Notes under the pieces: model-generated
Databases searched by the model: none
Told to the model about the DNA's origin: nothing
The model's input: only the letters and a program-made list of their open reading frames with translations
IMG/VR virus record: IMGVR_UViG_3300017917_001342
Location: 310,001-374,000 of that record
Strand: one strand, 5' to 3'
Length of the DNA stretch: 64,000 nt
Made by a program: the position numbers and the translations under genes
Part shown: one piece after another, positions 1,170 to 63,362 of the stretch
Layout of the letters: every line of letters starts with the position of its first letter
Position numbering within the stretch: position 1 is the first letter of the stretch

Positions 1170-1381
1170 GAGTTTTTATTTTCATATGCTTAAAACAATG
1201 AAATCGGAATGTATTTTTACATCCCGACTCACTGTATTCGTTTATAATATAATAATTTAGAGTCTGACAAATTCAACGCCTTCGGCGTGGCTTGGCAGTA
1301 ATATAATAATTTATCTTGACGGGTACTTTATATTTACTAGTCTTGATAGGTATGTAGTTAATATGTTATCATCATTGGTGT

Positions 1382-1718
1382 AGTAAAACGGCAGTTTGAT
1401 TCTGTTTCCAAGTCCAAACTGCCAAAAACTCATTTACGCTGCGAGAGCGTAAGAAGGTGCAACGTTATCGTTTGCAACTGTTGATTTTCTTGCGTTAACC
1501 GAGCTTGCGCCGGGCAACTCCACTCACATAGTCCGCCTGTCGATCCTATTTCGAGCCCATCAAGAATACACACCGTGATCTAAGGCCGGAATTCCCGCCC
1601 CTTGACGTATCGAAGTCGCTGTCCAGTTTCCCGAACTATTTCGATACATGTGTACTCTTGGTGGACCCGCTGGGTACCGCCCCCAGGTCCAGAACGTGTT
1701 CCGTTTGCTTCAACGTTA
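1382..1718 (-). ncRNA. ssrA: tmRNA, circularly permuted two-piece form: acceptor piece ~1718-1659, intervening segment 1658-1559, coding piece 1558-~1382
   Basis: Acceptor piece ends CTGGG-GGCGGTA-CCCAG-CGGGTCC-ACCA. Coding piece starts GGGCTCG-AAATAGGATCGAC. The acceptor stem GGGCTCG/CGGGTCC has G3:U70 and an A discriminator. Tag frame 1475-1434 reads ANDNVAPSYALAA*. Outer ends are approximate. Confidence 0.93.
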
Positions 1719-1723
1719 CAGTG

Positions 1724-1731
1724 TATTTATA
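1724..1731 (-). promoter_or_regulatory. T4-like late promoter (TATAAATA) driving the tmRNA precursor
   Basis: Exact TATAAATA just upstream of the acceptor piece. Confidence 0.65.
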
Positions 1732-1862
1732 GCTTCACTTTTTTGGTTTGTCAACTGGTGTTTTTTCTAACTTCTTGTCTTGCTTAGTCTGTTCTTCTAA
1801 ACATTCTGGACAAAATTCTGAACCGTATTCTGCACAATCTTTACAATGGTCTTTTTCTTTTT

Positions 1863-2078
1863 TCATAGTGCGGCCTTACGCTTTTCTATCATAAATGCAG
1901 TTGCACAAGCAGGACCACAAAATCCTGCTTGATACTCAGTTAAATGGTATAATGGCGCATAATAAGATCGTTTACTAACATCGAATGTATGTAACATTGT
2001 AGTAGTAGGATTGCCGCAGTGACTACAGGCCTGTCCTTCCGACCATACCATTACATCAGTTCGAGGTGTCGTAAACAT
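1863..2078 (-). CDS. small hypothetical protein with a possible Zn-binding Cys cluster
   Basis: CSHC...CGPAC; start overlaps the stop of the upstream gene. Confidence 0.6.
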   Translation of the reverse strand: MFTTPRTDVMVWSEGQACSHCGNPTTTMLHTFDVSKRSYYAPLYHLTEYQAGFCGPACATAFMIEKRKAAL

Positions 2079-2416
2079 TATCTAACTAGTCCAGTCTGTC
2101 TAGCACTTGGTACTGCTAATCCAGTTGTGTTGGTGATATAGCTGTTTTTTGCGTTTTCTTCTGACAGTGTGATAGTAATCACATGCTGCATACTGATTTT
2201 GAGTTTGGCATCAGGTTGGCCGCTAAACAAGAATGTTGGCAACATTTGCAATTGATATTGCTGTGTTTGCGGATCAACACCTAGTGTAAGTACCAATGGT
2301 TTGGTAATGGTAATTGAATCACTTGTAGAATCAACTACTTTTGCAACAACTTCGTCGCCTGTGACCATTTTTATGGTACAAACGTCATCATTTTTCCATG
2401 ATCGTTCTAATAGCAT
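2078..2416 (-). CDS. hypothetical protein, possible Sm-like fold
   Basis: TIKMVTGDEVVAKV...ITITKPL pattern recalled from small T4-like phage proteins with an Sm-like fold. Confidence 0.5.
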   Translation of the reverse strand: MLLERSWKNDDVCTIKMVTGDEVVAKVVDSTSDSITITKPLVLTLGVDPQTQQYQLQMLPTFLFSGQPDAKLKISMQHVITITLSEENAKNSYITNTTGLAVPSARQTGLVR

Positions 2417-2468
2417 ATGGTTCTCCTATATTGCTTTAGTGTGCAATACTATTGGATATTATGCAAGA

Positions 2469-3404
2469 TCAAATTAATGGTTTGTCATATTCAGCAGGAA
2501 CAGGCCATGCTCTTCCTACAAACGAAACATCACTTAAACTATATTTTGAAGTAGTTACAGACTGACCTTGGTTACCACCAGTGCAGTATAAAATACCATT
2601 ATCAATATAACGTATAAATGACACATGACTAAAGCTAAACCATACAACGTCATTTCTGCGCCACGATGCTACGTCTCTTACATTCATTCTAGTACAATCC
2701 CAGCTTTGAGAATAGGCTTTAGAAGCTAGACTATTGAGATAATTTGTACCAGATGCTTTTAACACAAGACCAACAAATGCAGCACACCACGGAACTTGGT
2801 CGCCAGGCTGGCGGGCACCCGGACCAGGATATGCACGATCAAGAACATCTTTTGGATATCCTACCTGTAAAAATGCATTCATGATATTTGGATTAGATGG
2901 ATAATTTGGCGCAACTGATCCTGCTGGAGTCTGTTCTCTCCATGCACCAGATTCTGCTTCTTTCAAGCACTGATTAAGATAATTTTCGACTCGACCCCAA
3001 ACAGTGTCACCTGGTGCTAATTGTATAGGGCTTCCTAAATTTTCTGGGTTACCAACCGGGTCGTTAGGATCACCTGTTCCATTGGGAATAGCATCGCCGC
3101 CGATAGTAGAAACAGTTTGTCCTGCATAATCGCCTGCAACACTTTGAGAAACATAGGGGTTTAATGCTGCAAACTGTTGTGTTGCAGCATAATTGTCTTT
3201 TTGACTTTGATTTGGTGCATAATCATCAACTGGTGGTGCAGCTGGCATTGACAATGCACTAAGTGAGCTATTGCCAGTGACTGCTTCCTTCCATAATGCC
3301 ACAGGTACGTTATTGATAAACACGTTTGGACTGCTATAAACATCCTTGACACCTGGATCAATAACGTTTAACGCTTGCGGTACACTGCGTCTTATATATG
3401 GCAT
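2469..3404 (-). CDS. virion-associated peptidoglycan amidase (TIGR02594/NlpC-P60/CHAP-like) with a PAAR-like N-terminus
   Basis: N-term SSPNVFINNVPVA resembles PAAR; C-term VPWCAAFVG...SHVSF...GGNQ gives a Cys-His catalytic pair. Confidence 0.7.
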   Translation of the reverse strand: MPYIRRSVPQALNVIDPGVKDVYSSPNVFINNVPVALWKEAVTGNSSLSALSMPAAPPVDDYAPNQSQKDNYAATQQFAALNPYVSQSVAGDYAGQTVSTIGGDAIPNGTGDPNDPVGNPENLGSPIQLAPGDTVWGRVENYLNQCLKEAESGAWREQTPAGSVAPNYPSNPNIMNAFLQVGYPKDVLDRAYPGPGARQPGDQVPWCAAFVGLVLKASGTNYLNSLASKAYSQSWDCTRMNVRDVASWRRNDVVWFSFSHVSFIRYIDNGILYCTGGNQGQSVTTSKYSLSDVSFVGRAWPVPAEYDKPLI

Positions 3405-3423
3405 CGGCTAACTCCTACAACAA

Positions 3424-3699
3424 TTACTTATTGTTGGAATTTTGCAAATATACCACTAATTGATCATGGCCGCCTATATATTCACCGTCTAACCAAATCT
3501 GTGGTACAGTGCGAGCGTTTGGTGCTGCTTCTAGCAGTGCTTCTCTAGTGGTCCAACTTTGATTTTCATGTAGATTCCTATTGTCTGGGCCGTTTACAGC
3601 TATGATTTTTTCTTCATAGGAAATATTTCTACTACTCATTAGGTTTTTTGCCCTTATGCAATATGGGCAATTGTCTTTTGTATATATTATTGCATGCAT
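3424..3699 (-). CDS. glutaredoxin
   Basis: CPYC active site, TVPQI and YIGG motifs; adjacent to nrdAB. Confidence 0.93.
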   Translation of the reverse strand: MHAIIYTKDNCPYCIRAKNLMSSRNISYEEKIIAVNGPDNRNLHENQSWTTREALLEAAPNARTVPQIWLDGEYIGGHDQLVVYLQNSNNK

Positions 3700-3713
3700 C
3701 TGTTAAATTCCTT

Positions 3714-4403
3714 TTACTCATTATGTTTACGGTGTACAAGTGTGCCGTTTTCATCAACATCTATCCACACTGCATCAGGTGGTATTGGTAAGCCGGCGTG
3801 TTTATAGTGCCATGCCCATTTTGTTACATATGCAACAGTTGGTTCGTCGCATCGTACAATGTTAAGTCCGCATTTAAACATAGCTTTTGCAAAATGCCTA
3901 TCACTCCATAGACGCTGAGTTGGATCAACAACCCACGTGGTCATAAGGTGCATAGCTTTGCTAGTAACAAACCAACTATTAGTATCTACCATATTTTCGC
4001 CATTGCTTTCTACCCTGTCAACATACATAGGAGTACAATCTTGCGAATAAATGGTCCTTGTAGCAACTACAGCAGCGGCCTTACTGTCTTCAATAACTTT
4101 TACCATTGTGTCTATGTGATGTGGTTCGTACCAATTGTCGGCATCAAGAAACGCAACTGCATCATAGCCTCGACTAAATGCACTAAGCGCACCCAATGCT
4201 CTAGGTGTAGCGCCTGCATCATTGTGTGAATGAGGTAAAACCATGTGTTCAGCAAACCTATAAAGTGGATCCAATTGTTTTGGATGGCCGTCTGCTACCA
4301 TAATGTGTGTAACAGGATATGTTTGCGAATTGACACTAGACATGCAGCGGTTAAGCTGCATGTCTGTTTCTTTATAGTAAGGTGTAACTACTGCTATTCT
4401 CAT
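3714..4403 (-). CDS. glycosyltransferase family 2 (GT-A)
   Basis: AVVTPYY...VADG...FLDADNW (DxD). Confidence 0.85.
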   Translation of the reverse strand: MRIAVVTPYYKETDMQLNRCMSSVNSQTYPVTHIMVADGHPKQLDPLYRFAEHMVLPHSHNDAGATPRALGALSAFSRGYDAVAFLDADNWYEPHHIDTMVKVIEDSKAAAVVATRTIYSQDCTPMYVDRVESNGENMVDTNSWFVTSKAMHLMTTWVVDPTQRLWSDRHFAKAMFKCGLNIVRCDEPTVAYVTKWAWHYKHAGLPIPPDAVWIDVDENGTLVHRKHNE

Positions 4404-5530
4404 TACAAAACAAAGTCTTTAAAACTATTAGCATCGAGGTCTTGTTTGATACCACCACTTACGTAACTGGTAATTTCAGTTTCTTGCGGCGCAACCTGTA
4501 CATCAGCATTTGATATCCACTTTTGCGTCCACGGCAACGGATTGCTACCACCCTTGTATCGCTGAGGTAGTCCTACTGCGGCCATACGTTTTGCTGCAAT
4601 ATGTTCTACATACTCTGATAGTAATTGATGATTGAGTCCGATCATGCTACCACCTTTGAACAGATATTCAGCCCAACGCTTTTCCTGTTCAACTGCATCT
4701 TCGAAAAGTTTGATAGCCATAGGCTGGCATTCAATTTCAATCTTAGCGTAATCAGGATCGTCCTTTGGCAGCAGCTTGAGCAGTGTCTGTGTACTAGCTA
4801 GATGCAGATTTTCATCGCGACAGATGAATTTGATAATCTTTGCATTGCCTTCCATCTTTTTCAATTCAGCAAATGCCCAGCTACATGCAAAGCTAACATA
4901 GAAACGAACACCTTCAAGGATGTTTACACTCATCAGTGCTAGCCACAGTTTCTTCTTCATTTCGTAAAGATCAACTGTGATCGTTTTTCCATTTACAGTG
5001 TGTGTACCTTCGCCTAGCATATTGTACCAATTGATAAGTTCAATTAGTTCATCGTAGTTCTTAGAGATATCATCAGCACAGTCAACGATCTCTTGAATGT
5101 CCATCATTTCATCAAAGATTTTACTTGGATTTGCATAGACATTTCTAATGATATGAGTGTAGCTACGACTATGAATAGTTTCACTAAATGTCCAAGTTGT
5201 GATCCAATTTTCAAGTTCTGGTAGACTGCAAATTGGACCAAATGCTACACTAGGTGCCCGACCCTGCACACTGTCTAGTAGAATTTGACGCTTGAGGTTA
5301 CTGGTGAAAATATGCTGTTCGTGTTCGGTTAAATCTTTAAAGTCTTTTGCATCACGCAGAATATCAACTTCTGTTGGTAGCCAGAAGAAGCCCAGCTGAC
5401 TTTCGGTTAGTTTATCAAAAGTCTTGTACTTCATAGTATCATAGCGTTGAATAGTGACACCGCCATTGGGATCAAGAAATGCAAGGCTCTTAGTGTGGTC
5501 GGAACGGTTAGTAACGTCAAAAACGCTCAT
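4403..5530 (-). CDS. nrdB: ribonucleotide reductase class Ia beta subunit
   Basis: FW.PTEV, LLDSVQGR, ETIHSRSYTH, LEGVRFYVSF and RDENLH di-iron ligands; C-term QETEITSY. Confidence 0.97.
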   Translation of the reverse strand: MSVFDVTNRSDHTKSLAFLDPNGGVTIQRYDTMKYKTFDKLTESQLGFFWLPTEVDILRDAKDFKDLTEHEQHIFTSNLKRQILLDSVQGRAPSVAFGPICSLPELENWITTWTFSETIHSRSYTHIIRNVYANPSKIFDEMMDIQEIVDCADDISKNYDELIELINWYNMLGEGTHTVNGKTITVDLYEMKKKLWLALMSVNILEGVRFYVSFACSWAFAELKKMEGNAKIIKFICRDENLHLASTQTLLKLLPKDDPDYAKIEIECQPMAIKLFEDAVEQEKRWAEYLFKGGSMIGLNHQLLSEYVEHIAAKRMAAVGLPQRYKGGSNPLPWTQKWISNADVQVAPQETEITSYVSGGIKQDLDANSFKDFVL

Positions 5531-5554
5531 TTAAAATCCTCTTTAATGTAAGTT

Positions 5555-5583
5555 ATTATGCCGAATAGTTTGTCAGTTGCCAA
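5555..5583 (-). promoter_or_regulatory. sigma70-like promoter between nrdA and nrdB
   Basis: TTGGCA-N17-CATAAT. Confidence 0.45.
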
Positions 5584-5588
5584 CCATC

Positions 5589-7916
5589 TTAGATGGTACA
5601 GCTTTCACAATTTGCATCATCTAGCGAACCACTTGGTAAGTCAACTTCCAACATCTTGTTTACATTCACTTCTTCTTGTCCGTCAAATGTATTGAAGTAG
5701 TAAAGCTGTTTGCCGCCGTACTTATAGAACATCAATACATGCTTGATCAGTTCAGTAAGTGGAATCTTAGTATCTGGATAATGTTGTGGGTTGTAACTGG
5801 TGTTAACACTGATACCTTGATCTACATATTTTTGTAGAACTCCGCAAATTTTAAGATAGCCTTCAGGTGTTTTTTGATCCCATAGCAATTCATACTTGTT
5901 TTTCAAACGACGGAATTCTGGTACAACCTGCTTGAGTACACCATGTTTGCTAGTCTTTACAGAAACATAGCTGCGCGGTGGCTCAATGCCGTTGGTTGCG
6001 TTTGCAATCTGCGCACTGGTTTCGCTAGGCATAATTGCCATTAGTGTACTATTGCGAATTCCCACTACTTTGAGATCTTCACGAAGTTCTTCCCATGGCA
6101 TGCGTTCTTGATGCGATACCAGTTCGTCGACATCGCGCTTGCGAGTATCGATTGGCAATATGCCACGACCGTATTTGGTTTCGTTACTCTTAGGACATGC
6201 ACCTTTGGTTCTGGCAAGGTCAACACTGGCTTTGATTAGGTAATAGCTCATTGCTTCCATGTATTCGTCAACCAGTGCTAATGCAGCAGGATCACTATAA
6301 CTGAGATTGTTCTTAGCTAGCCAATAGGCAAAGTTAATGATACCAACACCGAGTGGTCGACGGTTCATTGTGCTGATTTTGCCGGCCATAACAGGATAAT
6401 CTTGATAATCAAGTAGATTGTCAAGCGCCATTACTGCTAGTTTGCAAGGCTTTTCAAAGTCAGCAGGGCTCTTAATATTACCCCAATTGATTGCACTTAG
6501 AGTACAAAGGCTAATTTCGCCTTCTGTATCATTAATGTTGTTGAGCGGTTTAGTTGGCAAATCAATTTCAGCACAGAGATTACTCTGACGGATCGGCGCA
6601 ACGCTTTCGATAAATGATCCATGCATATTTGCATTGTCAACATTTTGTAGATAGATACGACCGGTGTTTTTGCGTTCTTCTATGAAGCTGCTGAATAGTT
6701 CAATGGCTGGTATGGTTTTCTTTCGAATCTTCTTATTTTTCTCTGCGTTTTCATAGAGTTCTCTAAACAACTCTTGGTCTGCAAAGAATGCATCATATAG
6801 ACCAGGAACGTCGTTTGGTGAGAACAGTGTAATATCGCGTCCTGTTGTCAAACGTTCGTAAAACAGTTTATTAAATTGTACGCCATAGTCCATATGACGA
6901 ACGCGATTGTCTTCTGTACCACGATTGTTTTTTAGCACAAGCAGGTCTTCTATTTCGTAATGCCATATTGGGAAATACAATGTTGCTGCGCCATTGCGAA
7001 CTCCGCCTTGACTGCAACTACGCACAGCAGCTTGGAACATTTTATAAAAACTGATAACACCGGTATGACTTGCATCACCGTTGCGTATCTGACTGCCGAT
7101 GGCGCGAATACTGCCGCCACCGATACCAATACCTGCTTTTTGGCTAACGTACTTTACAATAGCACTGGTAGTCGCATTGATACTGTCTAGACTATCGCCT
7201 GTTTCAATTAATACGCATGAACTAAACTGTCGCTGTGGTGTACGAACGCCTGACATGATTGGTGTTGGCAAACTGATGTCATGCTTACTAATTGCATCGT
7301 AGTAGTCTTTTACAATTTGCATACGAGTGTTGCGGTCATGGTTGATAAACAGTGTTGCAGCGATCAACGCATAGGCTATTTGCGGAGTTTCTTTAATTTC
7401 ACCGGTGACACGGTTTTGTACCAAATACTTGCCGCGCATCTGTTCCATTGCAACATAGGTAAGAGCCATATCCCTGTCGTGATCGATGAAACGGTTGATT
7501 TGTTCCCATTCACTATCGCTATACTTTTCAAGTAATTCTTTATCGTAAAAACCGTCTTGTGTATTCTTAACAACAAGATCTTTGATATGCCAAGGTTGAT
7601 ACTGCCCGTATACGTCTTTTCTAAGATGGTAGTTAACTAGTCTGCCTGCTACATATTGATAGTTTGGAGTTTCTTCACTGATGAGATCAGCAGCAGCTTT
7701 GATCAGTGTTTCTTGCATTGTAACAGTTTTGATGTTTTGATAGAACTGTATTTGGCTGCGAATTTCAACTTCGCTTGCACTTACACCGCTAATGCCTTCA
7801 GTTGCCCAAAACACAACTTTGTGCATTTTATCAAGATCTAACGGTTCTCGACGACCGTCTCGTTTCGTAACCATAATATCTGGTCGATGTGTTGCTGCCA
7901 TAATCTGTATCTCCAT
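5589..7916 (-). CDS. nrdA: ribonucleotide reductase class Ia alpha subunit with ATP-cone
   Basis: VTKRDG ATP-cone, PTPIM, SSCVL, SNLCAEI, C-terminal CESCTI; no intein-sized insert. Confidence 0.97.
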   Translation of the reverse strand: MEIQIMAATHRPDIMVTKRDGRREPLDLDKMHKVVFWATEGISGVSASEVEIRSQIQFYQNIKTVTMQETLIKAAADLISEETPNYQYVAGRLVNYHLRKDVYGQYQPWHIKDLVVKNTQDGFYDKELLEKYSDSEWEQINRFIDHDRDMALTYVAMEQMRGKYLVQNRVTGEIKETPQIAYALIAATLFINHDRNTRMQIVKDYYDAISKHDISLPTPIMSGVRTPQRQFSSCVLIETGDSLDSINATTSAIVKYVSQKAGIGIGGGSIRAIGSQIRNGDASHTGVISFYKMFQAAVRSCSQGGVRNGAATLYFPIWHYEIEDLLVLKNNRGTEDNRVRHMDYGVQFNKLFYERLTTGRDITLFSPNDVPGLYDAFFADQELFRELYENAEKNKKIRKKTIPAIELFSSFIEERKNTGRIYLQNVDNANMHGSFIESVAPIRQSNLCAEIDLPTKPLNNINDTEGEISLCTLSAINWGNIKSPADFEKPCKLAVMALDNLLDYQDYPVMAGKISTMNRRPLGVGIINFAYWLAKNNLSYSDPAALALVDEYMEAMSYYLIKASVDLARTKGACPKSNETKYGRGILPIDTRKRDVDELVSHQERMPWEELREDLKVVGIRNSTLMAIMPSETSAQIANATNGIEPPRSYVSVKTSKHGVLKQVVPEFRRLKNKYELLWDQKTPEGYLKICGVLQKYVDQGISVNTSYNPQHYPDTKIPLTELIKHVLMFYKYGGKQLYYFNTFDGQEEVNVNKMLEVDLPSGSLDDANCESCTI

Positions 7917-21719: not shown

Positions 21720-21781
21720 TATATCTCTCCTGAGAATTTATGCAAAACTGCTTTGCTGAGATATTTATACCTAGAGGCAAA

Positions 21782-23524: not shown

Positions 23525-23971
23525 ATGGATAACATTGAATCTATTAAATCATATAAAGACTTGATCAGTCGGTTAAATGAGGCTGAAGAAGAGCCTGCTG
23601 TTACACCACCAGCAGAAGAGCCTGCTGTTACACCCCCGCCGGAAGAAGAGCCTGCTGCTGCACCAGAAGCAGATACAGTTGACCAAGAACAAGACGACAA
23701 AGAAATTGAAGATGTAATGACATCTCCAAAGTCTGAAACTAAAAAGATATCTATTGGTACACTTGCATCTGATTTAGGTCTTGAAAATCCTGACATATTC
23801 AAATCTGCATTTAGACAACTTCGCAAAGGCGAATTACCAGACGACGAAGATGAAATGCGCGAATTGGGCGATGCATTTTTTAAAATAATGACCGCAGACG
23901 CATCTACCACACAAAGAGTAATAAATCGTCTGCGATCCATTTATCGTAAATCTTCTAAACCTAACGTCTAA
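23525..23971 (+). CDS. acidic hypothetical protein with EEPAVTPP tandem repeats
   Basis: GATAAATA promoter and GAGG RBS upstream; repeated gaagagcctgctgttaca. Confidence 0.65.
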   Translation: MDNIESIKSYKDLISRLNEAEEEPAVTPPAEEPAVTPPPEEEPAAAPEADTVDQEQDDKEIEDVMTSPKSETKKISIGTLASDLGLENPDIFKSAFRQLRKGELPDDEDEMRELGDAFFKIMTADASTTQRVINRLRSIYRKSSKPNV

Positions 23972-25397
23972 TTAAACTAGTCAACGACTGCAAATTCTGC
24001 ATGTTCTTAGCTAAATCCGATGTGGGTTTAGCCGTTGCAACCTGTCGTGCTGCTGCTGGTGTATCTGTTTGATCAGCAGTGTTTTTTCTACGCAATGCAT
24101 CAAACATATCTGCACCAGCAGCACTGGCCTGTAACTGATTTTGCTGTTCTTCGTCCAAATCAAATATACGCAGTGTATTTGGATCAAATCCTAAGAATAC
24201 TTTGCTTCCAACACCACTTGAACTACGAGTTTTTAAGAACTGTATTTGATACTGACCGCGCTCTTTCATTGCTGCACTAGCAAAGATACTGATCACGTTG
24301 TCTGCTGTTTGAACTTTACTCAAACCACCTGCAATATGACTGTGGTCATGTTCTTGTTCTTGCACTGCTGATCTGTTTAACTGAGATGCTGTGATCCCAA
24401 TCATATTGCGATCTGTACAAAGCCCTCTGAACTCTTCTGTAACAAACTTGTCTTTGATATTCAAGTTACTCGGATCAATTGCTTTGTTGTTTGGATAAAG
24501 AAGATCAAGATAATCTACTATCAACACATCGCAACGTTGTTGGGTTTCAATTTCATAGTTTTTGAGATATGCTTTGAGATCATTACAGGTGCTACCCTGT
24601 GGCAATTGTCTAACATGTAGTAAACCACTTGATCGTTGTGCTTGCTTAACTTTGAGTTCAACAGTGTCTAGATTCCTAAAGATTTCTTTACTGCCAACTT
24701 CAGTAAGCATACTGTCCATACGCATACTTGTCAGACCTTCGCTAAGTTCTAATGTGATATAAACCACGTTTAGCTTTTGCTTAGCAAGGTTTATACTCAT
24801 GTTTTGCAAGAACAGACTTTTACCAACACCAGAACCTGCTGCCCATATGGTTATCTCGCCTCGATTGATACCGCCATAGAGCTTGTCGTCAACTGATTTC
24901 CAGCCAGTGGTTACCTGTCCGTTTTTGTCTTTAATTTTCAATAGACGTTCGCGCGGATTTTCAAAGTAGTTAGTACCTATATCACTTTGCAGACTTATTA
25001 AGATTGCATCTCTAACTAGTTTTTCAACTTCGCCATAGTTACCTTTGTCGATGAGTTCAGTACTTGCCAACACTGCTTCTGCCAATGCACGATTTTTACA
25101 AAATTCTTCAATTTCTTTCAAAAACGCATCTTGGTGACCGTCTGTTATATTTTCGATAAAATCAAACTCAATACCAGTTTCTGCTTTTACCTGTATAAAC
25201 TTAGGCAATACTCGATATTCATCTGCATGTTTGAGAATATACCGCATAGCAGGTCGCAGTTTATTAACAAAATACTTTGCATTTAAAATGTTGACACAGC
25301 GAGCAAATATATCCTCACTGCTCAGCAACACGCTTATAAGCAACTTTTGTTTTTCTTCACCATATTGTATCGATTCTTGTTCTTCGCGCCTTGCCAT
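23961..25397 (-). CDS. gp41: replicative DnaB-like helicase (T4 gp41-like)
   Basis: AGSGVGKS Walker A, YITLELSE, IVDYLDL, TASQLNR, KTRSS. Confidence 0.92.
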   Translation of the reverse strand: MARREEQESIQYGEEKQKLLISVLLSSEDIFARCVNILNAKYFVNKLRPAMRYILKHADEYRVLPKFIQVKAETGIEFDFIENITDGHQDAFLKEIEEFCKNRALAEAVLASTELIDKGNYGEVEKLVRDAILISLQSDIGTNYFENPRERLLKIKDKNGQVTTGWKSVDDKLYGGINRGEITIWAAGSGVGKSLFLQNMSINLAKQKLNVVYITLELSEGLTSMRMDSMLTEVGSKEIFRNLDTVELKVKQAQRSSGLLHVRQLPQGSTCNDLKAYLKNYEIETQQRCDVLIVDYLDLLYPNNKAIDPSNLNIKDKFVTEEFRGLCTDRNMIGITASQLNRSAVQEQEHDHSHIAGGLSKVQTADNVISIFASAAMKERGQYQIQFLKTRSSSGVGSKVFLGFDPNTLRIFDLDEEQQNQLQASAAGADMFDALRRKNTADQTDTPAAARQVATAKPTSDLAKNMQNLQSLTSLIRR

Positions 25398-25398
25398 C

Positions 25399-26166
25399 TT
25401 ACTTCCTTATAATATCATCTTCGACACAGTTTTCGCCAAACTGTATTTCTACCATTCTTAATTCTTCAGTACCTTCGTTGGCTAACTGATGCCAGTCGCC
25501 TGTGTGTATCCAAAGGTGTTCGTGTTCACTAAAGACACCAGCTAATTCTACATCGCTGCTGACATTCAGGGTATATACAGTTGCTTTACCGTGTGTAACG
25601 AACCAAAACTCAGACCGCTTGTCATGCTTTTGCATGCTTAGACGTTTACCCGGTTCTACCGTTAATTCTTTTAGTTTTACACTTTTACCGTCTTGATGTA
25701 GCACTCTGTAATACCCCCATTGCCTTTCTGTTTTGGCGTTTTTCCAATCTTCTAATAACCACGAGCTAGAGTTGGCTTTGTTATTACCTCCAACTGCCCA
25801 GACAAATTTTAAATCATCGTCGATCATAGACATCCGCATCTCTGGTGTGTTAGTGCTGCCTCTATCGCCGCCGTTTGCAAAAATTATAATGTCATCTGGA
25901 TATTGCATTCTAACTTTTTTAATAGCGTCACATGCAGATCCGTCACTATCATCGAATTCAATTACATCATCTACTACTTCCAAATTAGCAATTACACTTT
26001 TACGTTCTGGCATAGACATAAAAGGACGTTCTTTTTTTCTAGTAAGCCATGCATCTGAATTAAGCCCGACTATTAATTTATCACCTAGAGATTTTGCAGC
26101 AATTAGGTACGCGATGTGGCCGCTGTGTATCGGATCAAATCCGCCTGTACACAATACAATTTTCAT
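25399..26166 (-). CDS. cytidylyltransferase-like domain fused to a mannose-6-phosphate isomerase type II cupin
   Basis: TGGFDPIHSGH (HxGH), NSDAWL..KK, FANGGDR; C-term LSMQKHDKRSEFW...WHQL. Confidence 0.85.
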   Translation of the reverse strand: MKIVLCTGGFDPIHSGHIAYLIAAKSLGDKLIVGLNSDAWLTRKKERPFMSMPERKSVIANLEVVDDVIEFDDSDGSACDAIKKVRMQYPDDIIIFANGGDRGSTNTPEMRMSMIDDDLKFVWAVGGNNKANSSSWLLEDWKNAKTERQWGYYRVLHQDGKSVKLKELTVEPGKRLSMQKHDKRSEFWFVTHGKATVYTLNVSSDVELAGVFSEHEHLWIHTGDWHQLANEGTEELRMVEIQFGENCVEDDIIRK

Positions 26167-27185
26167 GATTTGAACATCCTTCTTTTGATATTGATTTGCA
26201 ATTTATTATGTGTTCTATTGTCTATTATAGTTTGCAACGTGAAAAGTTTACCGTATTTGCAAGATGCATCTGCGGCATCTTTAACATCATCTTCCCATTC
26301 TGGAAAACTAACTGCCCAGTTCTCTTCTAATGCAACATCTATGAGACCTTGATTTTTACGCTGCCTGTCTGGCAACACAATTATTTCTTTGTCTGTGCTT
26401 TTTAGCAATGATAATTGTTGTTTGTTCAATTTGCTACCTAAAGCAGCAACACCATCTATTGCAATAGCATCTAGTGGCCCTTCGACTAATATTACATATT
26501 TTCTATTTGTTTTATGAATTACATCGCTGTTAAACAAATAGCCAAGCTGGAGATCACTGTTATAATATCTAGGAGTATCAGTTGGCGGTTTGCCTGCATA
26601 GCGTGCGGTCCACCCTACAATTTTATTTTTGTAATAAAATGGAATAATAAATCGCTTGTTGAGATCCCATTTTTCGCTTGACGACCAATAATAATCCCAA
26701 CCATTGGCAATTGCCGAGCCACGCGATGCAAGATAGTTACAGCATTGAACAAACTCGTCTGTGACGTTGTCATCTTCCATAACAACTTGAAACGGCCTTG
26801 CATTTTCTGGCAATTTAACTTCTGTAAAATCTGTTATGATTTTTACATCGCTAGTAGTTACTGCTACATCAACACCATTTATTTTGTTATGCAATAATTC
26901 TAGCTTGACTCGTTTAACATCATCATCTGACACACCAAGCCATTTTAACAGATTATCAAATTTCTTGCTGATATTTTGATTGTCATAAACAGTTTTAAAA
27001 CCACAGTTATAACAATTATATGCAACATATCCGCCTTCAGCCATAAGAAGGTTGCCGCGCATTCTATTGTCTTGATTATGGCCGCGATGATGACAACAAG
27101 GTGCATTAAACATAACCCAGCCGCGTGGACTAGATTTACGTTTTTGTGGTAGATGTTCCGCTATCAACTGATGTACGAGTGCCAT
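26163..27185 (-). CDS. gp61: DNA primase (T4 gp61-like)
   Basis: Zn-binding C..H...CYNC; TOPRIM VEGPLDA...DRQ...KDAAD. Confidence 0.9.
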   Translation of the reverse strand: MALVHQLIAEHLPQKRKSSPRGWVMFNAPCCHHRGHNQDNRMRGNLLMAEGGYVAYNCYNCGFKTVYDNQNISKKFDNLLKWLGVSDDDVKRVKLELLHNKINGVDVAVTTSDVKIITDFTEVKLPENARPFQVVMEDDNVTDEFVQCCNYLASRGSAIANGWDYYWSSSEKWDLNKRFIIPFYYKNKIVGWTARYAGKPPTDTPRYYNSDLQLGYLFNSDVIHKTNRKYVILVEGPLDAIAIDGVAALGSKLNKQQLSLLKSTDKEIIVLPDRQRKNQGLIDVALEENWAVSFPEWEDDVKDAADASCKYGKLFTLQTIIDNRTHNKLQINIKRRMFKS

Positions 27186-28113: not shown

Positions 28114-28127
28114 GTATTTATAAATAC
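28114..28127. promoter_or_regulatory. palindromic bidirectional late promoter
   Basis: GTATTTATAAATAC is a perfect palindrome giving TATAAATA on both strands between divergent genes. Confidence 0.7.
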
Positions 28128-35261: not shown

Positions 35262-36887
<1,626 letters not shown>

Positions 36888-36898
36888 TTATTCTCCTA

Positions 36899-37189
36899 TT
36901 AATCAAGCACTGCAAAGATTTCGTCTTCTTTAAGAATCAACAGATCCTCACCTTGGTGGCGAATCTGCGTACCAGAATGCTTACCAAACAGCACACGGTT
37001 ACTAACTGTAACGTCAATTGGAAGATAGTTGCCATTGCGGTCTTTCTTGCCCGGACCGACTGCTAGCACAACACCTACATTTGGTTTTTCAGCGACAGAA
37101 TCTGGGATAACGAGACCACCTTTAGTGACATTATCGCTGTCCACTCTTTTTACTATGACCCTATCATTAAGCGGTCTTAGATCTGACAT
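36899..37189 (-). CDS. groS: co-chaperonin GroES
   Basis: PLNDRVIV, GGLVIP mobile loop, VLAVGPG. Confidence 0.97.
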   Translation of the reverse strand: MSDLRPLNDRVIVKRVDSDNVTKGGLVIPDSVAEKPNVGVVLAVGPGKKDRNGNYLPIDVTVSNRVLFGKHSGTQIRHQGEDLLILKEDEIFAVLD

Positions 37190-39492: not shown

Positions 39493-40530
39493 TTAGTTGC
39501 CCATCTTACGGCGACGGATTGCTTCAAGAATGTCTTCAGGTGTAGACATCTTTGGCTTATCGCCTGCTGGTGCCGCAGGTGTTTCTGTTTGCGGCTTAGG
39601 GTCAACCCAACCAGTATCATGTGTAGTTTCTGCAGATTTTGCAGATGCACGTTCTAGTATGCTACTAGCTGTAACAGGTTTAGTAACTGGTGCTACTGCT
39701 GGTGCAACATCAGCATCACCGCCATCTGAACGCATACCGTTTGGCTTGTAGAATTGTCCCCAACGTTCAGTGTCATAGAGTTCTTCATTAACACTTGCAT
39801 GGAACAGTTCAACGATTGCGTTGAGATGATCATCATCTGGCTTCTTTGGCAAGAATTGACTTAGATTGTACAATCCAAACTTTTCAATGCTTTCCATTTC
39901 ACCATCGTTAAGCGGACGTTCTTTCATAGACCAACTAGAGCTAGCATAGTTAGCATAACCTCCCTTACTGGTTTTAGTGAGGTAGAAGTCACGCCCATTT
40001 GCATAGTCAGTAGGACTATTCTCGAGGTCCTGTCGCATAAGAATGCCTTTAACCACGTCAAACACACTTGGGTTAATGATAAACCTGCGGATTGGATTTT
40101 CCGGTGTGTTGTCATCCTTGTTTGGATTTTGTGTAACAAAGCCCTGGAACAGATAGCTCTTTTTACGCCAGTATTTACGAGCCATGTCTTCCAATGACGG
40201 ATCTTTCCACCATGAACGTGTTTCTGCTGCGATAGGACAGGTACCAGGTTTCCACATATCCATGCAAGGAACTTGCACTTCAACTGGCCTAGCGTCATTT
40301 TGACCTTTAACACCTGGGAATGGAATTTTGATAATCAGTCGTTCTACCCAGAAAAAGTCATTGGTATCATCACCGTCTGGGAGAAATCTTAGAGTTGCAG
40401 TGCTGCCTTCTGGGTTGTTCCAGAACGGATAAATGCTATTGTCGCTTGTAAAGTTTCCACCGCGACCACGTTCTTTACGTGCTTGTTGCTCTAAGAGTTT
40501 AGCTTGTATTTCTTTAAGATTAAGTGCCAT
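39493..40530 (-). CDS. gp32: single-stranded DNA-binding protein (T4 gp32-like)
   Basis: LRFLPDGD, C...G.CP, YANYASSSW; CATAAATA and GGAGG upstream. Confidence 0.85.
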   Translation of the reverse strand: MALNLKEIQAKLLEQQARKERGRGGNFTSDNSIYPFWNNPEGSTATLRFLPDGDDTNDFFWVERLIIKIPFPGVKGQNDARPVEVQVPCMDMWKPGTCPIAAETRSWWKDPSLEDMARKYWRKKSYLFQGFVTQNPNKDDNTPENPIRRFIINPSVFDVVKGILMRQDLENSPTDYANGRDFYLTKTSKGGYANYASSSWSMKERPLNDGEMESIEKFGLYNLSQFLPKKPDDDHLNAIVELFHASVNEELYDTERWGQFYKPNGMRSDGGDADVAPAVAPVTKPVTASSILERASAKSAETTHDTGWVDPKPQTETPAAPAGDKPKMSTPEDILEAIRRRKMGN

Positions 40531-40642
40531 GATATGTGCCTCCTATATGTGTTTTTTTCATGTGCCTAAATGTGTATTAAGACAACATACAAAGATCGCT
40601 GTATGCTGACAGTGTTATTTATGCCACAGATATCATCAAAAG

Positions 40643-41464
40643 TCAAAATAATAATTGATAATCTCTAGGATCAATGTTAAATTCACCGCAGGCATGTATC
40701 TTTGATACGTTGTCTAGCTTCGACCACTCAGTGTAACCTATGTATTGAGGTCTTACAAGAGTCGCCGATATAAATCTTTTGGTTGCATCTATTACCACAG
40801 AATGTCGCATGCAGTAGGATGCTAACAATGCACAGGGGTTCGGATGAATTAATTGGTTTGGTAAGTCAGCCCACTGACTTTCAAGATATCGCAACATCAA
40901 CAGGCCTGCTGCACTTCTGCCTGCAACATAACAAAGATCGTCTGCTAATTCGATGTCAGATTGGTCAACTGTAACAGATTCTGCAACAGTGTTTAGAGTA
41001 GCAACAACTTCCATAGTACCTGCAATTTTTGTAGACGTTGCAGTTTGAAAAAAACCATATTTGCAGTCTGGTCTGGCAAATACAATTTGCTCATATCGTG
41101 TACCTGACAGTATTTCTTGTTTTCTTAACTCTATGCCAAGTTGGTAATCTAGCCAGGCTAATTTCCAATAATCTGGTGCATATCCGTCCCAGCTCTGTCT
41201 ATGTGTATAAGGACATTTGTAATTTTCTTCATTTACAAATTTGCAGGATATTAGATTACTTTTGTAAAAATCTCTATGTAGACTATCGATCGTAACCGTA
41301 TCAGACTTGGGGAAACACATATACCAATCGATGTTATCGTAGCAGTTGTTTAAGAAAGCTAAATTTTGATATTTTACAAGATTCCATGTGCGTACATGTC
41401 CACGCAAAAATATTGCAGTTTTCATTGCAATGCACCAACTTTTAATTTGATGCGATTTGCCCAA
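40643..41464 (-). CDS. hypothetical protein, possible GT-A-like glycosyltransferase
   Basis: FLRGHVRTW...IVFARPD pattern; weak. Confidence 0.45.
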   Translation of the reverse strand: MGKSHQIKSWCIAMKTAIFLRGHVRTWNLVKYQNLAFLNNCYDNIDWYMCFPKSDTVTIDSLHRDFYKSNLISCKFVNEENYKCPYTHRQSWDGYAPDYWKLAWLDYQLGIELRKQEILSGTRYEQIVFARPDCKYGFFQTATSTKIAGTMEVVATLNTVAESVTVDQSDIELADDLCYVAGRSAAGLLMLRYLESQWADLPNQLIHPNPCALLASYCMRHSVVIDATKRFISATLVRPQYIGYTEWSKLDNVSKIHACGEFNIDPRDYQLLF

Positions 41465-49467: not shown

Positions 49468-49944
49468 TTATCTACCTATTGCTGCTGCTATTGTGGGACC
49501 AAGAGTTGGGTTGTTACTCCAATTCGGTGTTAGGTTTAGACCAACATATCCAATTTGACTACTGGGATCTCGTATACTGTTAATGGTATATAAGAAGTCG
49601 TTTAATAGTACACCTTGTTTAAACAGGTTTTGTACTGGCTGCCCTGTTTGTGTTGCATAATATGTTGCTAGGTTTGCTAACACTTCGATTAGATCGTCCG
49701 GTACACCTTGCCCGCCAAACAAACCCTTTGCTAAATTATAGGTCTGTGCTTGCATACCTGTTACGTATACAGCAGGTGCTTGCGATAAACCATAATTTGT
49801 TGCATCACTTGCAGATGAAACAGGATTTCCACTACCATCGGCAAATTGCCAATTACCGTTTCTATTAACAACTTGTAACTGACCGCTGTTTAATGCAAGT
49901 TGCTTTCGTATGTTGTTTAATATTACATCTTTGTTAAGAGCCAT
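49468..49944 (-). CDS. hypothetical protein
   Basis: 158 aa, coupled. Confidence 0.65.
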   Translation of the reverse strand: MALNKDVILNNIRKQLALNSGQLQVVNRNGNWQFADGSGNPVSSASDATNYGLSQAPAVYVTGMQAQTYNLAKGLFGGQGVPDDLIEVLANLATYYATQTGQPVQNLFKQGVLLNDFLYTINSIRDPSSQIGYVGLNLTPNWSNNPTLGPTIAAAIGR

Positions 49945-51221
49945 TAGTAGGTACCTCTTGGATTATACGGATAACCGCTGCCACCACTGTTATTGTTCAA
50001 TGCATTTTTTGCAGAAGGTGGTTGCAACCCGCCAGTACCAAAATTGTAATTTCCGTAGGTACTAAGAGTACTGTTAGATGGATTCAACGCTACAGAAAAT
50101 GTTGTTAAGAACGGTGCAGCAATCGCAGATGTTGCTGCTGGTAACGATCCAAACGGTAATCCAGACAACACAGCACCAGCTATAGTGCTAGCAATAGTGT
50201 TATTGCTGTAGGTTCTTGATACAGGTGCAGTTGTATAATAGACGTTATCAAATGCATTTGTTGCATTGGTATATGTTATAGCACCCGGTGTGCCAGATGT
50301 TATACCCATACCAGATTTTGGATTAGTTGTTTTAGTAAATGCGTTGTAACTGACCTTAGATAATCCAAAGTTGGCAACTGCGGCAGCGGCTGTGCCTATA
50401 ATACTAGCTTCTGGCTGGTTTGAATTGGCAATATACTGACTAATCATAGTATCAGCTACATTTGCCAATGCATCGCGTATTACGCCTGCTACACTAACAT
50501 CGGGTTCTACTGCTGGCGGGCCAAGATCAAATCCAAATTGCGCTGCTAACGACGGAGTAATATTTTGACTAGGATCGTAATTAACTGTCTCATATGTAAC
50601 CTGCATACCTATGTCAGTTAATTGTTCCCCATCGCTTTGATATGAGTTAAAGTTTACGTTTGTTATTCTAGGATTTAGATAACTGAATCGTGTGTACTTT
50701 AATCCAAATATTGCATAGACTTCTAGTCTGGTAAAAAAGTTTATTTCTTCAGTGAGAGGTCTTAATCCCCAGCCAGTGCCATCACTGAATGTAGGCGACA
50801 CTGGACTCTGATTCATTGTCAACGCAGACTTTTGTCTAGCATCACCAAAATAGTAAGTAAAATACTGTCGCCACATGTCAAGTGGCTTGTTGTCTACTGT
50901 GTCCCATATAGTTAAGTTTACTGGTTTATAATCAATGTTGGTATAGACAGGTCTGTGGCGATTGTATTGATTAAGAGTTTTAACCTTTAAATCGACGTTG
51001 GGTTTGTCAACTTTTTTGATTTTAAAACTTATACCGTTTACGCCGCCAAGTTCTCGCAACCATGGATATATTGCAGCAGCTTGGCTATTAACAACAAAGT
51101 TTGCATAATACATCCACTGGTAACGTGGAACTGCATACATGTATTGTCCAGGACTCTGTGCCCCAAACATCCATGCAGCATATTGCTTGTTTCTAAATGA
51201 TGTAATCTGTGCTATAGCCAT
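49944..51221 (-). CDS. tail tube-like/baseplate protein (gp19/gp48/gp54 fold paralog)
   Basis: VDKP.V....LNQYN...YKPVNLTIWD pattern shared with the tube protein; TATAAATA upstream. Confidence 0.6.
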   Translation of the reverse strand: MAIAQITSFRNKQYAAWMFGAQSPGQYMYAVPRYQWMYYANFVVNSQAAAIYPWLRELGGVNGISFKIKKVDKPNVDLKVKTLNQYNRHRPVYTNIDYKPVNLTIWDTVDNKPLDMWRQYFTYYFGDARQKSALTMNQSPVSPTFSDGTGWGLRPLTEEINFFTRLEVYAIFGLKYTRFSYLNPRITNVNFNSYQSDGEQLTDIGMQVTYETVNYDPSQNITPSLAAQFGFDLGPPAVEPDVSVAGVIRDALANVADTMISQYIANSNQPEASIIGTAAAAVANFGLSKVSYNAFTKTTNPKSGMGITSGTPGAITYTNATNAFDNVYYTTAPVSRTYSNNTIASTIAGAVLSGLPFGSLPAATSAIAAPFLTTFSVALNPSNSTLSTYGNYNFGTGGLQPPSAKNALNNNSGGSGYPYNPRGTY

Positions 51222-51240
51222 GAAAATATTTATACCAATA

Positions 51241-51268: not shown

Positions 51269-51293
51269 TGATTCTGAGTTGTATCGGTAATTA

Positions 51294-63359: not shown

Positions 63360-63362
63360 TTA

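What the first reader, a model, noticed from the sequence alone, without database searches (positions are those of the whole stretch)
1382..1731. Phage-encoded circularly permuted (two-piece) tmRNA under a T4-type late promoter
Seen in sequence: the CCA-bearing acceptor piece precedes the coding piece, the acceptor stem has the G3:U70 alanine identity pair, the T-loop is GGCGGTA rather than TTCRAAT, the tag reads ANDNVAPSYALAA*, and TATAAATA lies directly upstream. Established: permuted tmRNA with this T-loop and ANDN-type tags is typical of Alphaproteobacteria. Inference: the host is alphaproteobacterial, and the phage expresses its own ribosome-rescue RNA late in infection using host SmpB, RNase P and AlaRS. 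The ORF track misses this gene entirely.
Basis: partly seen in the sequence, partly recalled or inferred. Interest (0 to 1): 0.85.

Follow-up and report, generated by a model that had tools for sequence, protein, structure and literature searches.

The report
Phage-encoded two-piece tmRNA gene
A giant T4-like phage carries its own intact, split-type ribosome-rescue RNA (tmRNA); this is real but already known for such phages, and its promoter looks built for expression both early and late, not only late.

Summary
ARAGORN and two Rfam models (97 and 101 bits, thresholds 50 and 47) find one circularly permuted, alphaproteobacterial-type tmRNA on the minus strand, about 1390-1719. It has the tag ANDNVAPSYALAA, a G3:U70 pair, an encoded CCA and the T-loop GGCGGUA. 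The window comes from a 519-kb T4-like jumbo phage contig whose nearest isolates infect Sinorhizobium and Agrobacterium.

The interpretation needs two corrections.

1. TATAAATA is not a bare late promoter. This compound arrangement recurs in 65 of 78 related viral contigs. The other TATAAATA sites in the window, two of them before tail-tube genes, have no -35. The best reading is transcription by host sigma-70 early and by the phage late factor later.

2. The tmRNA belongs to a large phage-borne family whose signature is nearly absent from bacterial genomes. It therefore points to an alphaproteobacterial origin, not necessarily the present host.

Phage two-piece tmRNAs are already published (Melnitz, pelagimyophages, Sinorhizobium jumbo phage AP-J-162). 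This is a new member of a known kind, of moderate to low interest.

The parts
1749..1754 (-). -35 box TTGACA (6 of 6), 17 nt upstream of TATAAATA
   Evidence: the only TTGACA-N16-18-TATAAA site in the 64 kb (0.18 expected); conserved at the same spacing in 65 of 78 related viral loci.
1724..1731 (-). TATAAATA: the -10 element (TATAAA) of the sigma-70-type promoter and, at the same time, the T4-type late-promoter motif
   Evidence: The other exact copies precede tail-tube genes and have no -35 box.
1659..1719 (-). Acceptor piece, 61 nt. It holds the 5' strand of helix P2 (1719-1687), the T-arm (1686-1670, loop GGCGGUA at 1681-1675), the 3' strand of the acceptor stem (1669-1663) and ACCA (1662-1659). 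The predicted transcription start is about 1719-1717.
   Evidence: Family covariation.
1559..1658 (-). Intervening segment, 100 nt, predicted to be removed. It folds as a long hairpin that extends the acceptor stem. U1559 comes just before the predicted RNase P cut.
   Evidence: -38.3 kcal/mol on its own; the flanking ACAC...GUGUAU...UGAU|GGG is conserved; the length ranges from 5 to 224 nt in the family.
1390..1558 (-). Coding piece, about 169 nt. It holds the 5' strand of the acceptor stem GGGCUCG (1558-1552) and the D-loop analogue AAAUAGGAUCGAC (1551-1539), followed by the P2 3' strand, a possible PK1, the tag frame and the 3' hairpin.
1434..1475 (-). Tag reading frame, from the GCA resume codon to the TAA stop, encoding ANDNVAPSYALAA. 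The stop codon sits in the helix-5 hairpin at 1452-1434.
   Evidence: synonymous codon variation at the conserved residues across the family.
1383..1423 (-). 3' terminal hairpin enclosing the invariant loop motif GAAACAGAA, followed by GUUUUAC. This is the probable 3' end and a weak terminator.
   Evidence: aligned to the 3' end of the alpha_tmRNA model; invariant loop; covarying inner stem
40616..40646 (-). Context: a second compound promoter, TTGACT-N17-CATAAATA, upstream of the gp32-like SSB gene (39493-40530)
   Evidence: 2 sites found, 0.15 expected; 0 of 100 shuffles reach 2
51227..51234 (-). Context: TATAAATA with no -35 box, 5 nt upstream of the tail-tube-like gene 49944-51221. A similar site at 51916-51923 precedes tail-tube gene 51294-51890, another lies at 21762-21769, and a further one at 28115-28122.

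Best explanation
This is an intact gene for a two-piece (circularly permuted) tmRNA of alphaproteobacterial ancestry, carried by a roughly 519-kb T4-like jumbo phage.

Shown: every sequence element of the tRNA-like domain and of the tag template is present. The same elements covary or stay conserved in more than 100 viral contigs.

Inferred mechanism:
1. Transcription starts at about 1719 from a compound promoter. Host sigma-70 holoenzyme can use TTGACA-N17-TATAAA early. A gp55-type late factor can use TATAAATA late. The RNA would therefore be made throughout infection.
2. The precursor folds so that the 100-nt intervening hairpin extends the acceptor stem.
3. Host RNase P cuts before G1558, and host 3' processing trims back to the encoded CCA at 1659. 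This leaves a 61-nt acceptor piece and a coding piece of about 169 nt, held together by the acceptor stem and helix P2.
4. Host AlaRS charges the RNA through the G3:U70 pair, and host SmpB and EF-Tu deliver it to stalled ribosomes.
5. Translation resumes at GCA and adds ANDNVAPSYALAA. The ALAA end of the tag sends the product to host ClpXP-type proteases.

The likely benefit is to keep ribosomes free and recycle amino acids while phage-induced mRNA decay produces non-stop messages.
For: Identity: (ARAGORN; two covariance models at about twice their thresholds). Searches give the anatomy and a fold z-score of -3.43.

Phage context: (NrdAB, gp41-like helicase, primase, UvsX, gp32, large terminase, tail-tube proteins). 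Searches show that the window is IMG/VR contig 3300017917_001342, 518,643 bp. One search gives the nearest large terminases: Phosso 52.7% and Atu_ph07 50.8%.

Conserved locus. Contigs L025, L110, L113 and L041 carry a tmRNA downstream of the same nrdA-nrdB gene string, in the same orientation.

Selection for function in the phage family:
- The variable T-stem pair is Watson-Crick in 121 of 121 loci, with four different pair types.
- The acceptor stem is fully paired in 98 of 105 loci, with 19 distinct stems.
- G3:U70 is kept in 104 of 105 loci, and ACCA in 120 of 121.
- Helix P2a covaries. The 3' hairpin and helix 5 covary.
- Of 56 unique tag frames, 45 end in LAA, and synonymous codons vary at each conserved residue.

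Promoter. One search shows a subgroup with separate TGnTATAAT and TATAAATA boxes. The related phage Atu_ph07 encodes a gp55-like late sigma factor (PMC6102473).

Nearest isolate: Phosso also carries a permuted tmRNA, which is not annotated.
Against: There are no expression or processing data, so transcription start, timing, cleavage sites and charging all rest on homology. TATAAA lacks the T at -7 that sigma-70 normally needs, so early use of the promoter could be weak. Neither a gp55 nor an smpB gene was seen in the 64 kb examined, and the other roughly 455 kb of the contig were not available. PK1 could not be confirmed by covariation. The benefit to the phage is conjecture.
Confidence: 0.72

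Rival explanations
1. One reading: the tmRNA is transcribed only late, from a T4-type late promoter read by a gp55-like factor, and the upstream TTGACA has no function.
For: Exact TATAAATA is the late motif, and in this window it precedes tail-tube genes. It is invariant in 71 unique family promoters, by the way they were anchored. TATAAA lacks the -7 T that sigma-70 prefers.
Against: T4-type late promoters need no -35 box, yet TTGACA is conserved at exactly 17 nt in 59 loci (65 at 16-18 nt) while the spacer varies freely. The late-type sites in the window lack a -35 box. The gene lies at the end of an nrdAB (early-type) gene string in the same orientation. The Melnitz tmRNA was assigned an early promoter (PMC9004378).
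Confidence: 0.13
2. The promoter is purely of the host sigma-70 type (early or constitutive), inherited with the gene, and the resemblance of its -10 element to TATAAATA is incidental.
For: TTGACA-N17-TATAAA matches 11 of 12 consensus positions. The Rfam alpha_tmRNA consensus itself carries a CUAUAUU box at the aligned position, so bacterial ssrA genes have a -10 element there.
Against: The full 8-mer TATAAATA, rather than TATAAT, recurs in 78 of 121 viral loci. A subgroup has a good TGnTATAAT box and, in addition, a separate TATAAATA a few nt downstream. Sigma-70 use alone does not explain that second box.
Confidence: 0.12
3. The RNA does not rescue ribosomes for the phage. It acts as a decoy that titrates host SmpB, or as a device to tag selected host proteins for destruction.
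For: A phage RNA consisting only of the tRNA-like domain (mycobacteriophage DS6A) inhibits host tmRNA (PMC4131195, PMC11915505). The Melnitz authors raise selective tagging as a possibility (PMC9004378).
Against: The full tag frame, with its resume codon and a protease-type ALAA end, is kept under peptide-level selection. A decoy would not need it. No targeting element is apparent.
Confidence: 0.08
4. It is not a working phage gene: a fragment of a host ssrA integration site, a decaying pseudogene, or an assembly chimera.
For: tmRNA genes are common prophage integration sites. The G+C content of the gene (about 50%) is higher than that of its flanks (about 41%).
Against: The gene is complete and has its own promoter. 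Phage genes lie on both sides and have homologues in L025. The same locus is occupied in four related contigs. No integrase lies next to it. All functional elements are intact. Structured RNAs are normally richer in G+C than AT-rich phage DNA.
Confidence: 0.02

Closest known systems
Two-piece tmRNA of Alphaproteobacteria (Caulobacter type; Rfam RF01849 alpha_tmRNA, RF04321 tmRNA_permuted)
   Same: Permuted gene order, T-loop GGCGGUA, the GAAAUAGGAUCGAC segment, G3:U70, encoded CCA, an ANDN... tag, and the 3' loop GAAACAGAA.
   Different: It is shorter. The 5' hairpin (model positions about 40-62) and about 45 nt after the stop codon (about 275-318) are missing. The 5' P2 strand is of a phage type (GUAACGUUGAAGC). 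With the T-arm attached, that signature was found in 37 of 120 viral loci but in only 2 contigs among the genomes of 185,579 bacterial species. One of those two is clearly a phage contig and the other is probably one.
tmRNAs of marine T4-like phages (OM43 phage Melnitz, pelagimyophages HTVC008M and Mosig; PMC9004378)
   Same: A virulent T4-like phage carrying a complete alpha-type two-piece ssrA and no reported smpB. Many IMG/VR contigs of this type share the promoter and 5' region seen here.
   Different: No glutamine riboswitch is present here. The carrier is a 519-kb jumbo phage of the Atu_ph07/Phosso lineage rather than a pelagiphage of about 150 kb.
tmRNA of Sinorhizobium jumbo phages (AP-J-162, PMC11242549; Phosso, found here)
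   Same: This is the nearest cultured phage lineage by large terminase. Phosso has a permuted alpha-type tmRNA with tag ANDNVSTKVALAA, an identical ...GCUCUCGCAGCGUAA end and a TTGACT-N16-TGTAAATA promoter.
   Different: Phosso's intervening segment is 410 nt against 100 nt here. The immediate neighbours differ. Similarity over the mature parts is limited (no percentage was computed), and the two lie far apart in the tmRNA tree.
One-piece tmRNAs of mycobacteriophages (Bxz1 group) and Bacillus phage G (PMC4131195)
   Same: Phage-encoded tmRNA with no phage smpB reported.
   Different: Those are standard, unpermuted genes of a different bacterial ancestry.

Membership tests
Two-piece (permuted) tmRNA, alpha type | Covariance-model score above the curated threshold | tested here: met
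   RF01849: 97.2 bits against 50. RF04321: 101.2 bits against 47.
Two-piece (permuted) tmRNA, alpha type | Gene order: the CCA-bearing acceptor piece lies upstream of the coding piece | tested here: met
   Acceptor piece 1719-1659, coding piece 1558-1390.
Two-piece (permuted) tmRNA, alpha type | tRNA-like domain: 7-bp acceptor stem with G3:U70, discriminator A plus CCA, and a T-arm | tested here: met
   In the family these features covary or are conserved.
Two-piece (permuted) tmRNA, alpha type | Tag frame that starts at an Ala resume codon, ends in a hydrophobic protease signal, and has its stop codon in helix 5 | tested here: met
   ANDNVAPSYALAA*, with a hairpin at 1452-1434.
Two-piece (permuted) tmRNA, alpha type | Pseudoknot PK1 upstream of the resume codon | tested here: inconclusive
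   Rfam pairs CCGG with UCGG, and a second 3-bp stem is possible. Only 2-4 of 8 relatives keep these pairs in the MAFFT alignment.
Two-piece (permuted) tmRNA, alpha type | Processing into two RNAs, alanylation, SmpB binding | not testable with these tools
   Needs RNA from infected cells.
Two-piece (permuted) tmRNA, alpha type | A partner smpB gene in the same genome | tested here: inconclusive
   No SmpB family appears among the 25 strongest Pfam families of 69 window ORFs. Only 64 of 519 kb were seen, so use of host SmpB is presumed.
T4-type late promoter | TATAAATA about 6-7 nt upstream of the transcript start | tested here: met
   1731-1724. The model's first position is 1719.
T4-type late promoter | The motif marks late (virion) genes of the same phage, independently of any -35 box | tested here: met
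   Sites before both tail-tube genes and two other genes have no -35 box. The overall count is not enriched (6 found, 6.5 expected), but 4 of the 6 lie in the 5% of the window that is intergenic, all in sense orientation.
T4-type late promoter | gp55, gp33 and sliding-clamp genes present | tested here: inconclusive
   None appear among the strong PHROG hits of the window. The relative Atu_ph07 has a gp55-like gene. The rest of the contig was not seen.
Sigma-70-type promoter | TTGACA, a 17 +/- 1 nt spacer, then TATAAT | tested here: met
   11 of 12 positions match, with a 17-nt spacer. The -7 T is replaced by A. The tool's own scan skips this site because it requires that T.
Phage-borne alpha-type tmRNA family (IMG/VR, Melnitz-like) | Shared 5' region GUAACGUUGAAGC, a compound promoter, and T4-like neighbouring genes | tested here: met
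   The nearest tmRNAs are those of L004 (81% over 113 columns, branch support 99) and L046.

The most novel reading that the evidence does not exclude
The gene belongs to a tmRNA lineage that now lives essentially only in phages. It would move as a cassette with an invariant compound early-plus-late promoter (TTGACA-N17-TATAAATA) and be exchanged among T4-like phages at a conserved locus next to nrdAB. Its role would be to maintain ribosome rescue through the whole infection, possibly as a counter to host defences that cut mRNA or tRNA or that generate non-stop translation. Compatibility with host SmpB could then limit host range.
Probability: 0.3. Interest if true: 0.55.

Novelty: new member of a known kind. 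Interest (0 to 1): 0.33.

Why it matters
The result adds one well-resolved example to a class that is known but under-annotated. ARAGORN-based annotation misses members with long intervening segments, as in Phosso. GenBank records sometimes lay a hypothetical CDS over the gene, as in RcRudolph. The curated tmRNA database lists only 79 phage sequences, whereas a single T-arm pattern retrieves at least 120 IMG/VR contigs.

The conserved compound promoter is a concrete, testable clue. It suggests these phages want the rescue RNA throughout infection, which bears on why virulent phages invest in trans-translation at all. The result also warns against reading a host's taxonomy directly from a phage tmRNA type.

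Tried and rejected
- Megablast of 20 kb of the window against GenBank phages found no match. A blastn search with the tmRNA found only a 66-nt hit in RcRudolph.
- The tool's sigma-70 scan did not list the tmRNA promoter, because it demands a T at the last -10 position. I searched for the site explicitly instead.
- A whole-window count of TATAAATA shows no enrichment. Only the positional analysis is informative.
- MAFFT plus RNAalifold on 89 family members recovered only the tRNA-like domain and helix P2a. Covariation for PK1 and distal P2 was inconclusive.
- ARAGORN failed on 53 of 121 loci, including L004, L113 and Phosso, which Rfam detects.
- A tmRNA tree on 117 columns is too poorly resolved to prove cassette exchange.
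- No glutamine riboswitch or other Rfam family lies in 1-2600.
- A blastn search with the Phosso tmRNA found nothing in Atu_ph07, in line with the published count of zero.
- The SmpB and gp55 search covered only the window, and only the 25 strongest families were shown.
- The minimum-energy fold pairs the 5' end GUAACGUUG with UAACGUUGC inside the tag frame. I treated this as chance, because relatives have different codons there.
- The ideas of an integration-site remnant or an assembly chimera were rejected (see rival explanations).

Full report
**Observation**

The feature is real and lies on the minus strand. ARAGORN reports a single permuted tmRNA at 1343-1751 with the tag ANDNVAPSYALAA* and no other tRNA-like gene in the 64 kb. 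Rfam's alpha_tmRNA model (RF01849) matches 1758-1390 at 97.2 bits against a threshold of 50. The newer tmRNA_permuted model (RF04321) matches 1719-1434 at 101.2 bits against 47 (repeated with lax filters, which found nothing else in 1-2600).

**Anatomy**

Reading the sequence gives the following layout:
- The acceptor piece runs 1719-1659. Its T-stem is CUGGG/CCCAG, its T-loop GGCGGUA lies at 1681-1675, the 3' acceptor strand is CGGGUCC, and ACCA ends at 1659.
- A 100-nt intervening segment runs 1658-1559.
- The coding piece starts at 1558 with GGGCUCG.

The acceptor stem is G1-C, G2-C, G3-U, C4-G, U5-G, C6-G, G7-C. After it come several further elements:
- the conserved AAAUAGGAUCGAC segment;
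- the resume codon GCA at 1475;
- the stop codon at 1436-1434, inside a hairpin at 1452-1434;
- a 3' hairpin at 1423-1390, whose loop GAAACAGAA aligns to the 3' end of the alpha model.

The 330-nt precursor folds with the intervening segment as a long hairpin stacked on the acceptor stem. It is more stable than all 100 shuffles (z = -3.43).

**Genomic context**

The window is phage DNA of T4-like type:
- NrdB and NrdA lie at 4403-7916.
- A gp41-like helicase and a primase lie at 23961-27185.
- GroEL, UvsX, a gp32-like SSB and the large terminase are also present.
- Two tail-tube proteins lie at 49944-51890.

The tmRNA matches IMG/VR contig 3300017917_001342 (518,643 bp) at 100% identity. There is no nucleotide-level relative in GenBank phages. 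By large terminase, the nearest isolates are Sinorhizobium phage Phosso (469 kb, 52.7% identity) and Agrobacterium phage Atu_ph07 (490 kb, 50.8%).

**The gene is a conserved feature of a phage lineage**

Four of them share the same gene string as the window: L025 (from a 216-kb contig), L110, L113 and L041. In each, the string is nrdA, nrdB, two or three small genes, then the tmRNA, all in the same orientation.

The nearest isolate, Phosso, also has a permuted tmRNA that its record does not annotate. Rfam scores it at 108 and 113 bits, its tag is ANDNVSTKVALAA, and its intervening segment is 410 nt. ARAGORN misses it.

Across the viral loci the RNA is clearly under selection for tmRNA function:
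- The one variable T-stem pair is Watson-Crick in 121 of 121 loci, with all four pair types represented.
- The acceptor stem is fully paired in 98 of 105 loci, with 19 different stems.
- G3:U70 is kept in 104 of 105 loci, and ACCA is encoded in 120 of 121.
- Helix P2a, helix 5 and the 3' hairpin show compensatory changes.
- Among 56 unique tag frames, 45 end in LAA and 33 begin with ANDN. Every conserved residue is written with several synonymous codons. The peptide itself is therefore under selection, which argues against a mere SmpB decoy.

TATAAATA (1731-1724) is present. As a word it is not enriched in the window, with 6 copies found against 6.5 expected. Its placement, however, is informative. 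Four of the six copies lie in the 5% of the window that is intergenic, all in sense orientation just upstream of minus-strand genes. Two of those genes are the tail-tube genes. A fifth copy (28115) sits just before a ribosome-binding site and an ATG. All of these lack a -35 box, with 3-5 mismatches to TTGACA. This is what T4-type late promoters look like, and the related Atu_ph07 encodes a gp55-like late sigma factor (PMC6102473).

The tmRNA copy is different. A perfect TTGACA lies exactly 17 nt upstream of it, at 1754-1749. TTGACA-N16-18-TATAAA occurs once in the window, against 0.18 expected.

The same compound design recurs in the family. Of the 121 loci examined (120 IMG/VR contigs plus the RcRudolph locus), 78 have TATAAATA upstream of the tmRNA. 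Of these, 65 have TTGACA (at most one mismatch) at 16-18 nt, and 59 have it at exactly 17 nt. In 71 unique promoter windows, the information content peaks at the two boxes and falls to nothing in the spacer.

A late promoter needs no -35 box, and a sigma-70 promoter would do better with TATAAT. Conservation of both elements is therefore best explained by use of both. A subgroup of contigs supports this. It carries a separate TGnTATAAT box followed a few bases later by TATAAATA (also L122).

Within the window the only other compound site, TTGACT-N17-CATAAATA, precedes the gp32-like SSB gene. Two sites were found against 0.15 expected, and no shuffle reached two. In T4, gene 32 is known to be transcribed in more than one phase; I state this from general knowledge and did not test it here.

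I therefore infer expression both early and late, not late only. The Melnitz authors likewise placed their phage tmRNA behind an early promoter (PMC9004378). The predicted start is about 1719-1717, which coincides with the first position of the tmRNA_permuted model. The acceptor piece may therefore need no 5' trimming.

**Mechanism (inferred from homology)**

The steps below are inferred by homology to bacterial two-piece tmRNA.
1. The precursor pairs GGGCUCG with CGGGUCC.
2. RNase P cuts after U1559.
3. The 3' trailer is trimmed back to the encoded CCA.
4. The two pieces stay joined through the acceptor stem and helix P2.
5. AlaRS reads the G3:U70 pair.
6. SmpB and EF-Tu deliver the RNA to ribosomes stalled on broken messages.
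7. The ALAA-ended tag hands the products to ClpXP-type proteases.

No smpB appears among the strong Pfam hits of 69 window ORFs. However, 455 kb of the contig were not available, so use of host SmpB is an assumption. The benefit to the phage is conjecture: freeing ribosomes and recycling amino acids while host and phage mRNAs are being degraded.

**Host**

An alphaproteobacterial host is plausible, because the nearest isolates infect Rhizobiaceae. It does not follow from the tmRNA type.

The 5' region of this RNA (GUAACGUUGAAGC...) differs from the bacterial consensus in the Rfam model. With the T-arm attached, that signature occurs in 37 of 120 viral loci, but in only two contigs among the representative genomes of 185,579 species. 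One of the two is a T4-like phage contig binned into a Rhodobacteraceae MAG; its gp43-type polymerase scores 1030 bits. The other is a 335-kb, 36% G+C contig that has the same phage promoter and an endolysin-like ORF.

The exact-pattern search would miss close cellular variants such as the SAR11-type sequences that the Melnitz paper places nearest. The claim that the lineage is phage-restricted is therefore provisional. Melnitz itself carries an alpha-type tmRNA but infects OM43, which is not an alphaproteobacterium (PMC9004378).

**Comparison with what is known, and novelty**

Phage tmRNAs have been catalogued since the mycobacteriophage Bxz1 group (PMC4131195). Two-piece forms were counted in 53 unique cases among 18,146 phage genomes, and studied in Melnitz and pelagimyophages (PMC9004378). 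The Sinorhizobium jumbo phage AP-J-162 is reported to have one tmRNA, and Atu_ph07 none (PMC11242549). Bradyrhizobium elkanii phages carry tmRNAs (PMC12656738). The 2025 tmRNA database holds 79 phage sequences (PMC11915505).

This gene is therefore a new member of a known kind. Compared with the bacterial model it is trimmed, lacking the 5' hairpin and about 45 nt after the stop codon. It has no glutamine riboswitch, unlike Melnitz.

The modestly new points are these:
- the conserved compound promoter;
- the conserved position next to nrdAB;
- several unannotated tmRNAs in GenBank phages.

Syntenic relatives carry rather different tmRNA subtypes at the same locus. This hints at cassette exchange, but the 117-column tree is too weak to show it.

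**Verdict**

Interest is 0.33.

Noticed in passing
L124 5924-6613 (Sinorhizobium phage Phosso PV764938, about 349,553-350,242): An unannotated permuted tmRNA (Rfam 108 and 113 bits) with an unusually long 410-nt intervening segment, tag ANDNVSTKVALAA and promoter TTGACT-N16-TGTAAATA. ARAGORN does not detect it.
   Followed up: partly
L001 1463-1877 (Rhodobacter phage RcRudolph OP009285): A permuted tmRNA (tag ANDNVRMDAQALAA; Rfam 95 and 104 bits) lies under the annotated hypothetical CDS RCRUDOLPH_61. T-arm matches with no annotation also occur in RcSimone-Hastad, RcXuper, vB_RpoS-V10, MD18 and DSS3P8.
   Followed up: partly
L123 (PBPT01000016.1, 335-kb contig of a Neomarinimicrobiota MAG) and L122 (FZLS01000066.1, Rhodobacteraceae bin): Both carry a phage-type tmRNA with the phage promoter. 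L122 is clearly a T4-like phage contig (gp43 polymerase, primase) binned into a bacterial MAG. L123 (36% G+C, an endolysin-like ORF, a tRNA-Thr) may be a jumbo phage binned as a bacterium.
   Followed up: partly
window 40616-40646 (-): A second compound promoter, TTGACT-N17-CATAAATA, lies upstream of the gp32-like SSB gene (39493-40530). Apart from the tmRNA site it is the only one of this kind in the window.
   Followed up: partly
L025, L110, L113, L041 compared with window 1390-7916: Relatives with the same nrdA-nrdB-...-tmRNA gene order carry tmRNAs with different acceptor stems, 5' regions and tags (for example ANDNFVASEIRLAA and ANANRAPEMALAA). The window's nearest tmRNA (L004) comes from a less similar contig. 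This could reflect cassette exchange, but the tree is too weak to decide.
   Followed up: partly
L017, L029, L030, L049, L052, L061, L064, L104, L118, L122 (upstream of their tmRNAs): In this subgroup a sigma-70 extended -10 box (TGnTATAAT, with a TTTACA-like -35 box) is followed within a few nt by a separate (T)ATAAATA motif. That amounts to tandem rather than fused early and late elements.
   Followed up: no
window 35262-37189 (-): Phage-encoded GroEL (540 aa, phrog_5725, E 2e-173) next to a GroES/Cpn10 homologue.
   Followed up: no
window 51990-63842: A block of sugar-nucleotide and polysaccharide genes: epimerase/dehydratase, GDP-mannose dehydratase, UDP-glucose dehydrogenase, a glycosyltransferase, a heptose kinase/adenylyltransferase and cupins. 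Its G+C content (34-37%) is lower than that of the rest of the window. SET-domain, fatty-acid desaturase, Asp/Arg hydroxylase and TnsA-like endonuclease hits also occur somewhere in the window.
   Followed up: no
window 1711-1719 and 1461-1469 (-): The minimum-energy fold pairs the 5' end of the acceptor piece (GUAACGUUG) with UAACGUUGC inside the tag frame, instead of forming the canonical distal P2 helix. This is probably chance, because relatives have different codons there.
   Followed up: partly
window 1244-1316 (+): Two AT-rich near-repeats (ATATAATAATTTA) flank a small GC hairpin (ACGCC-UUCG-GCGU) in the gap between the converging plus-strand genes and the tmRNA. This may be a bidirectional terminator region. 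The repeat finder did not report it as a repeat family.
   Followed up: no
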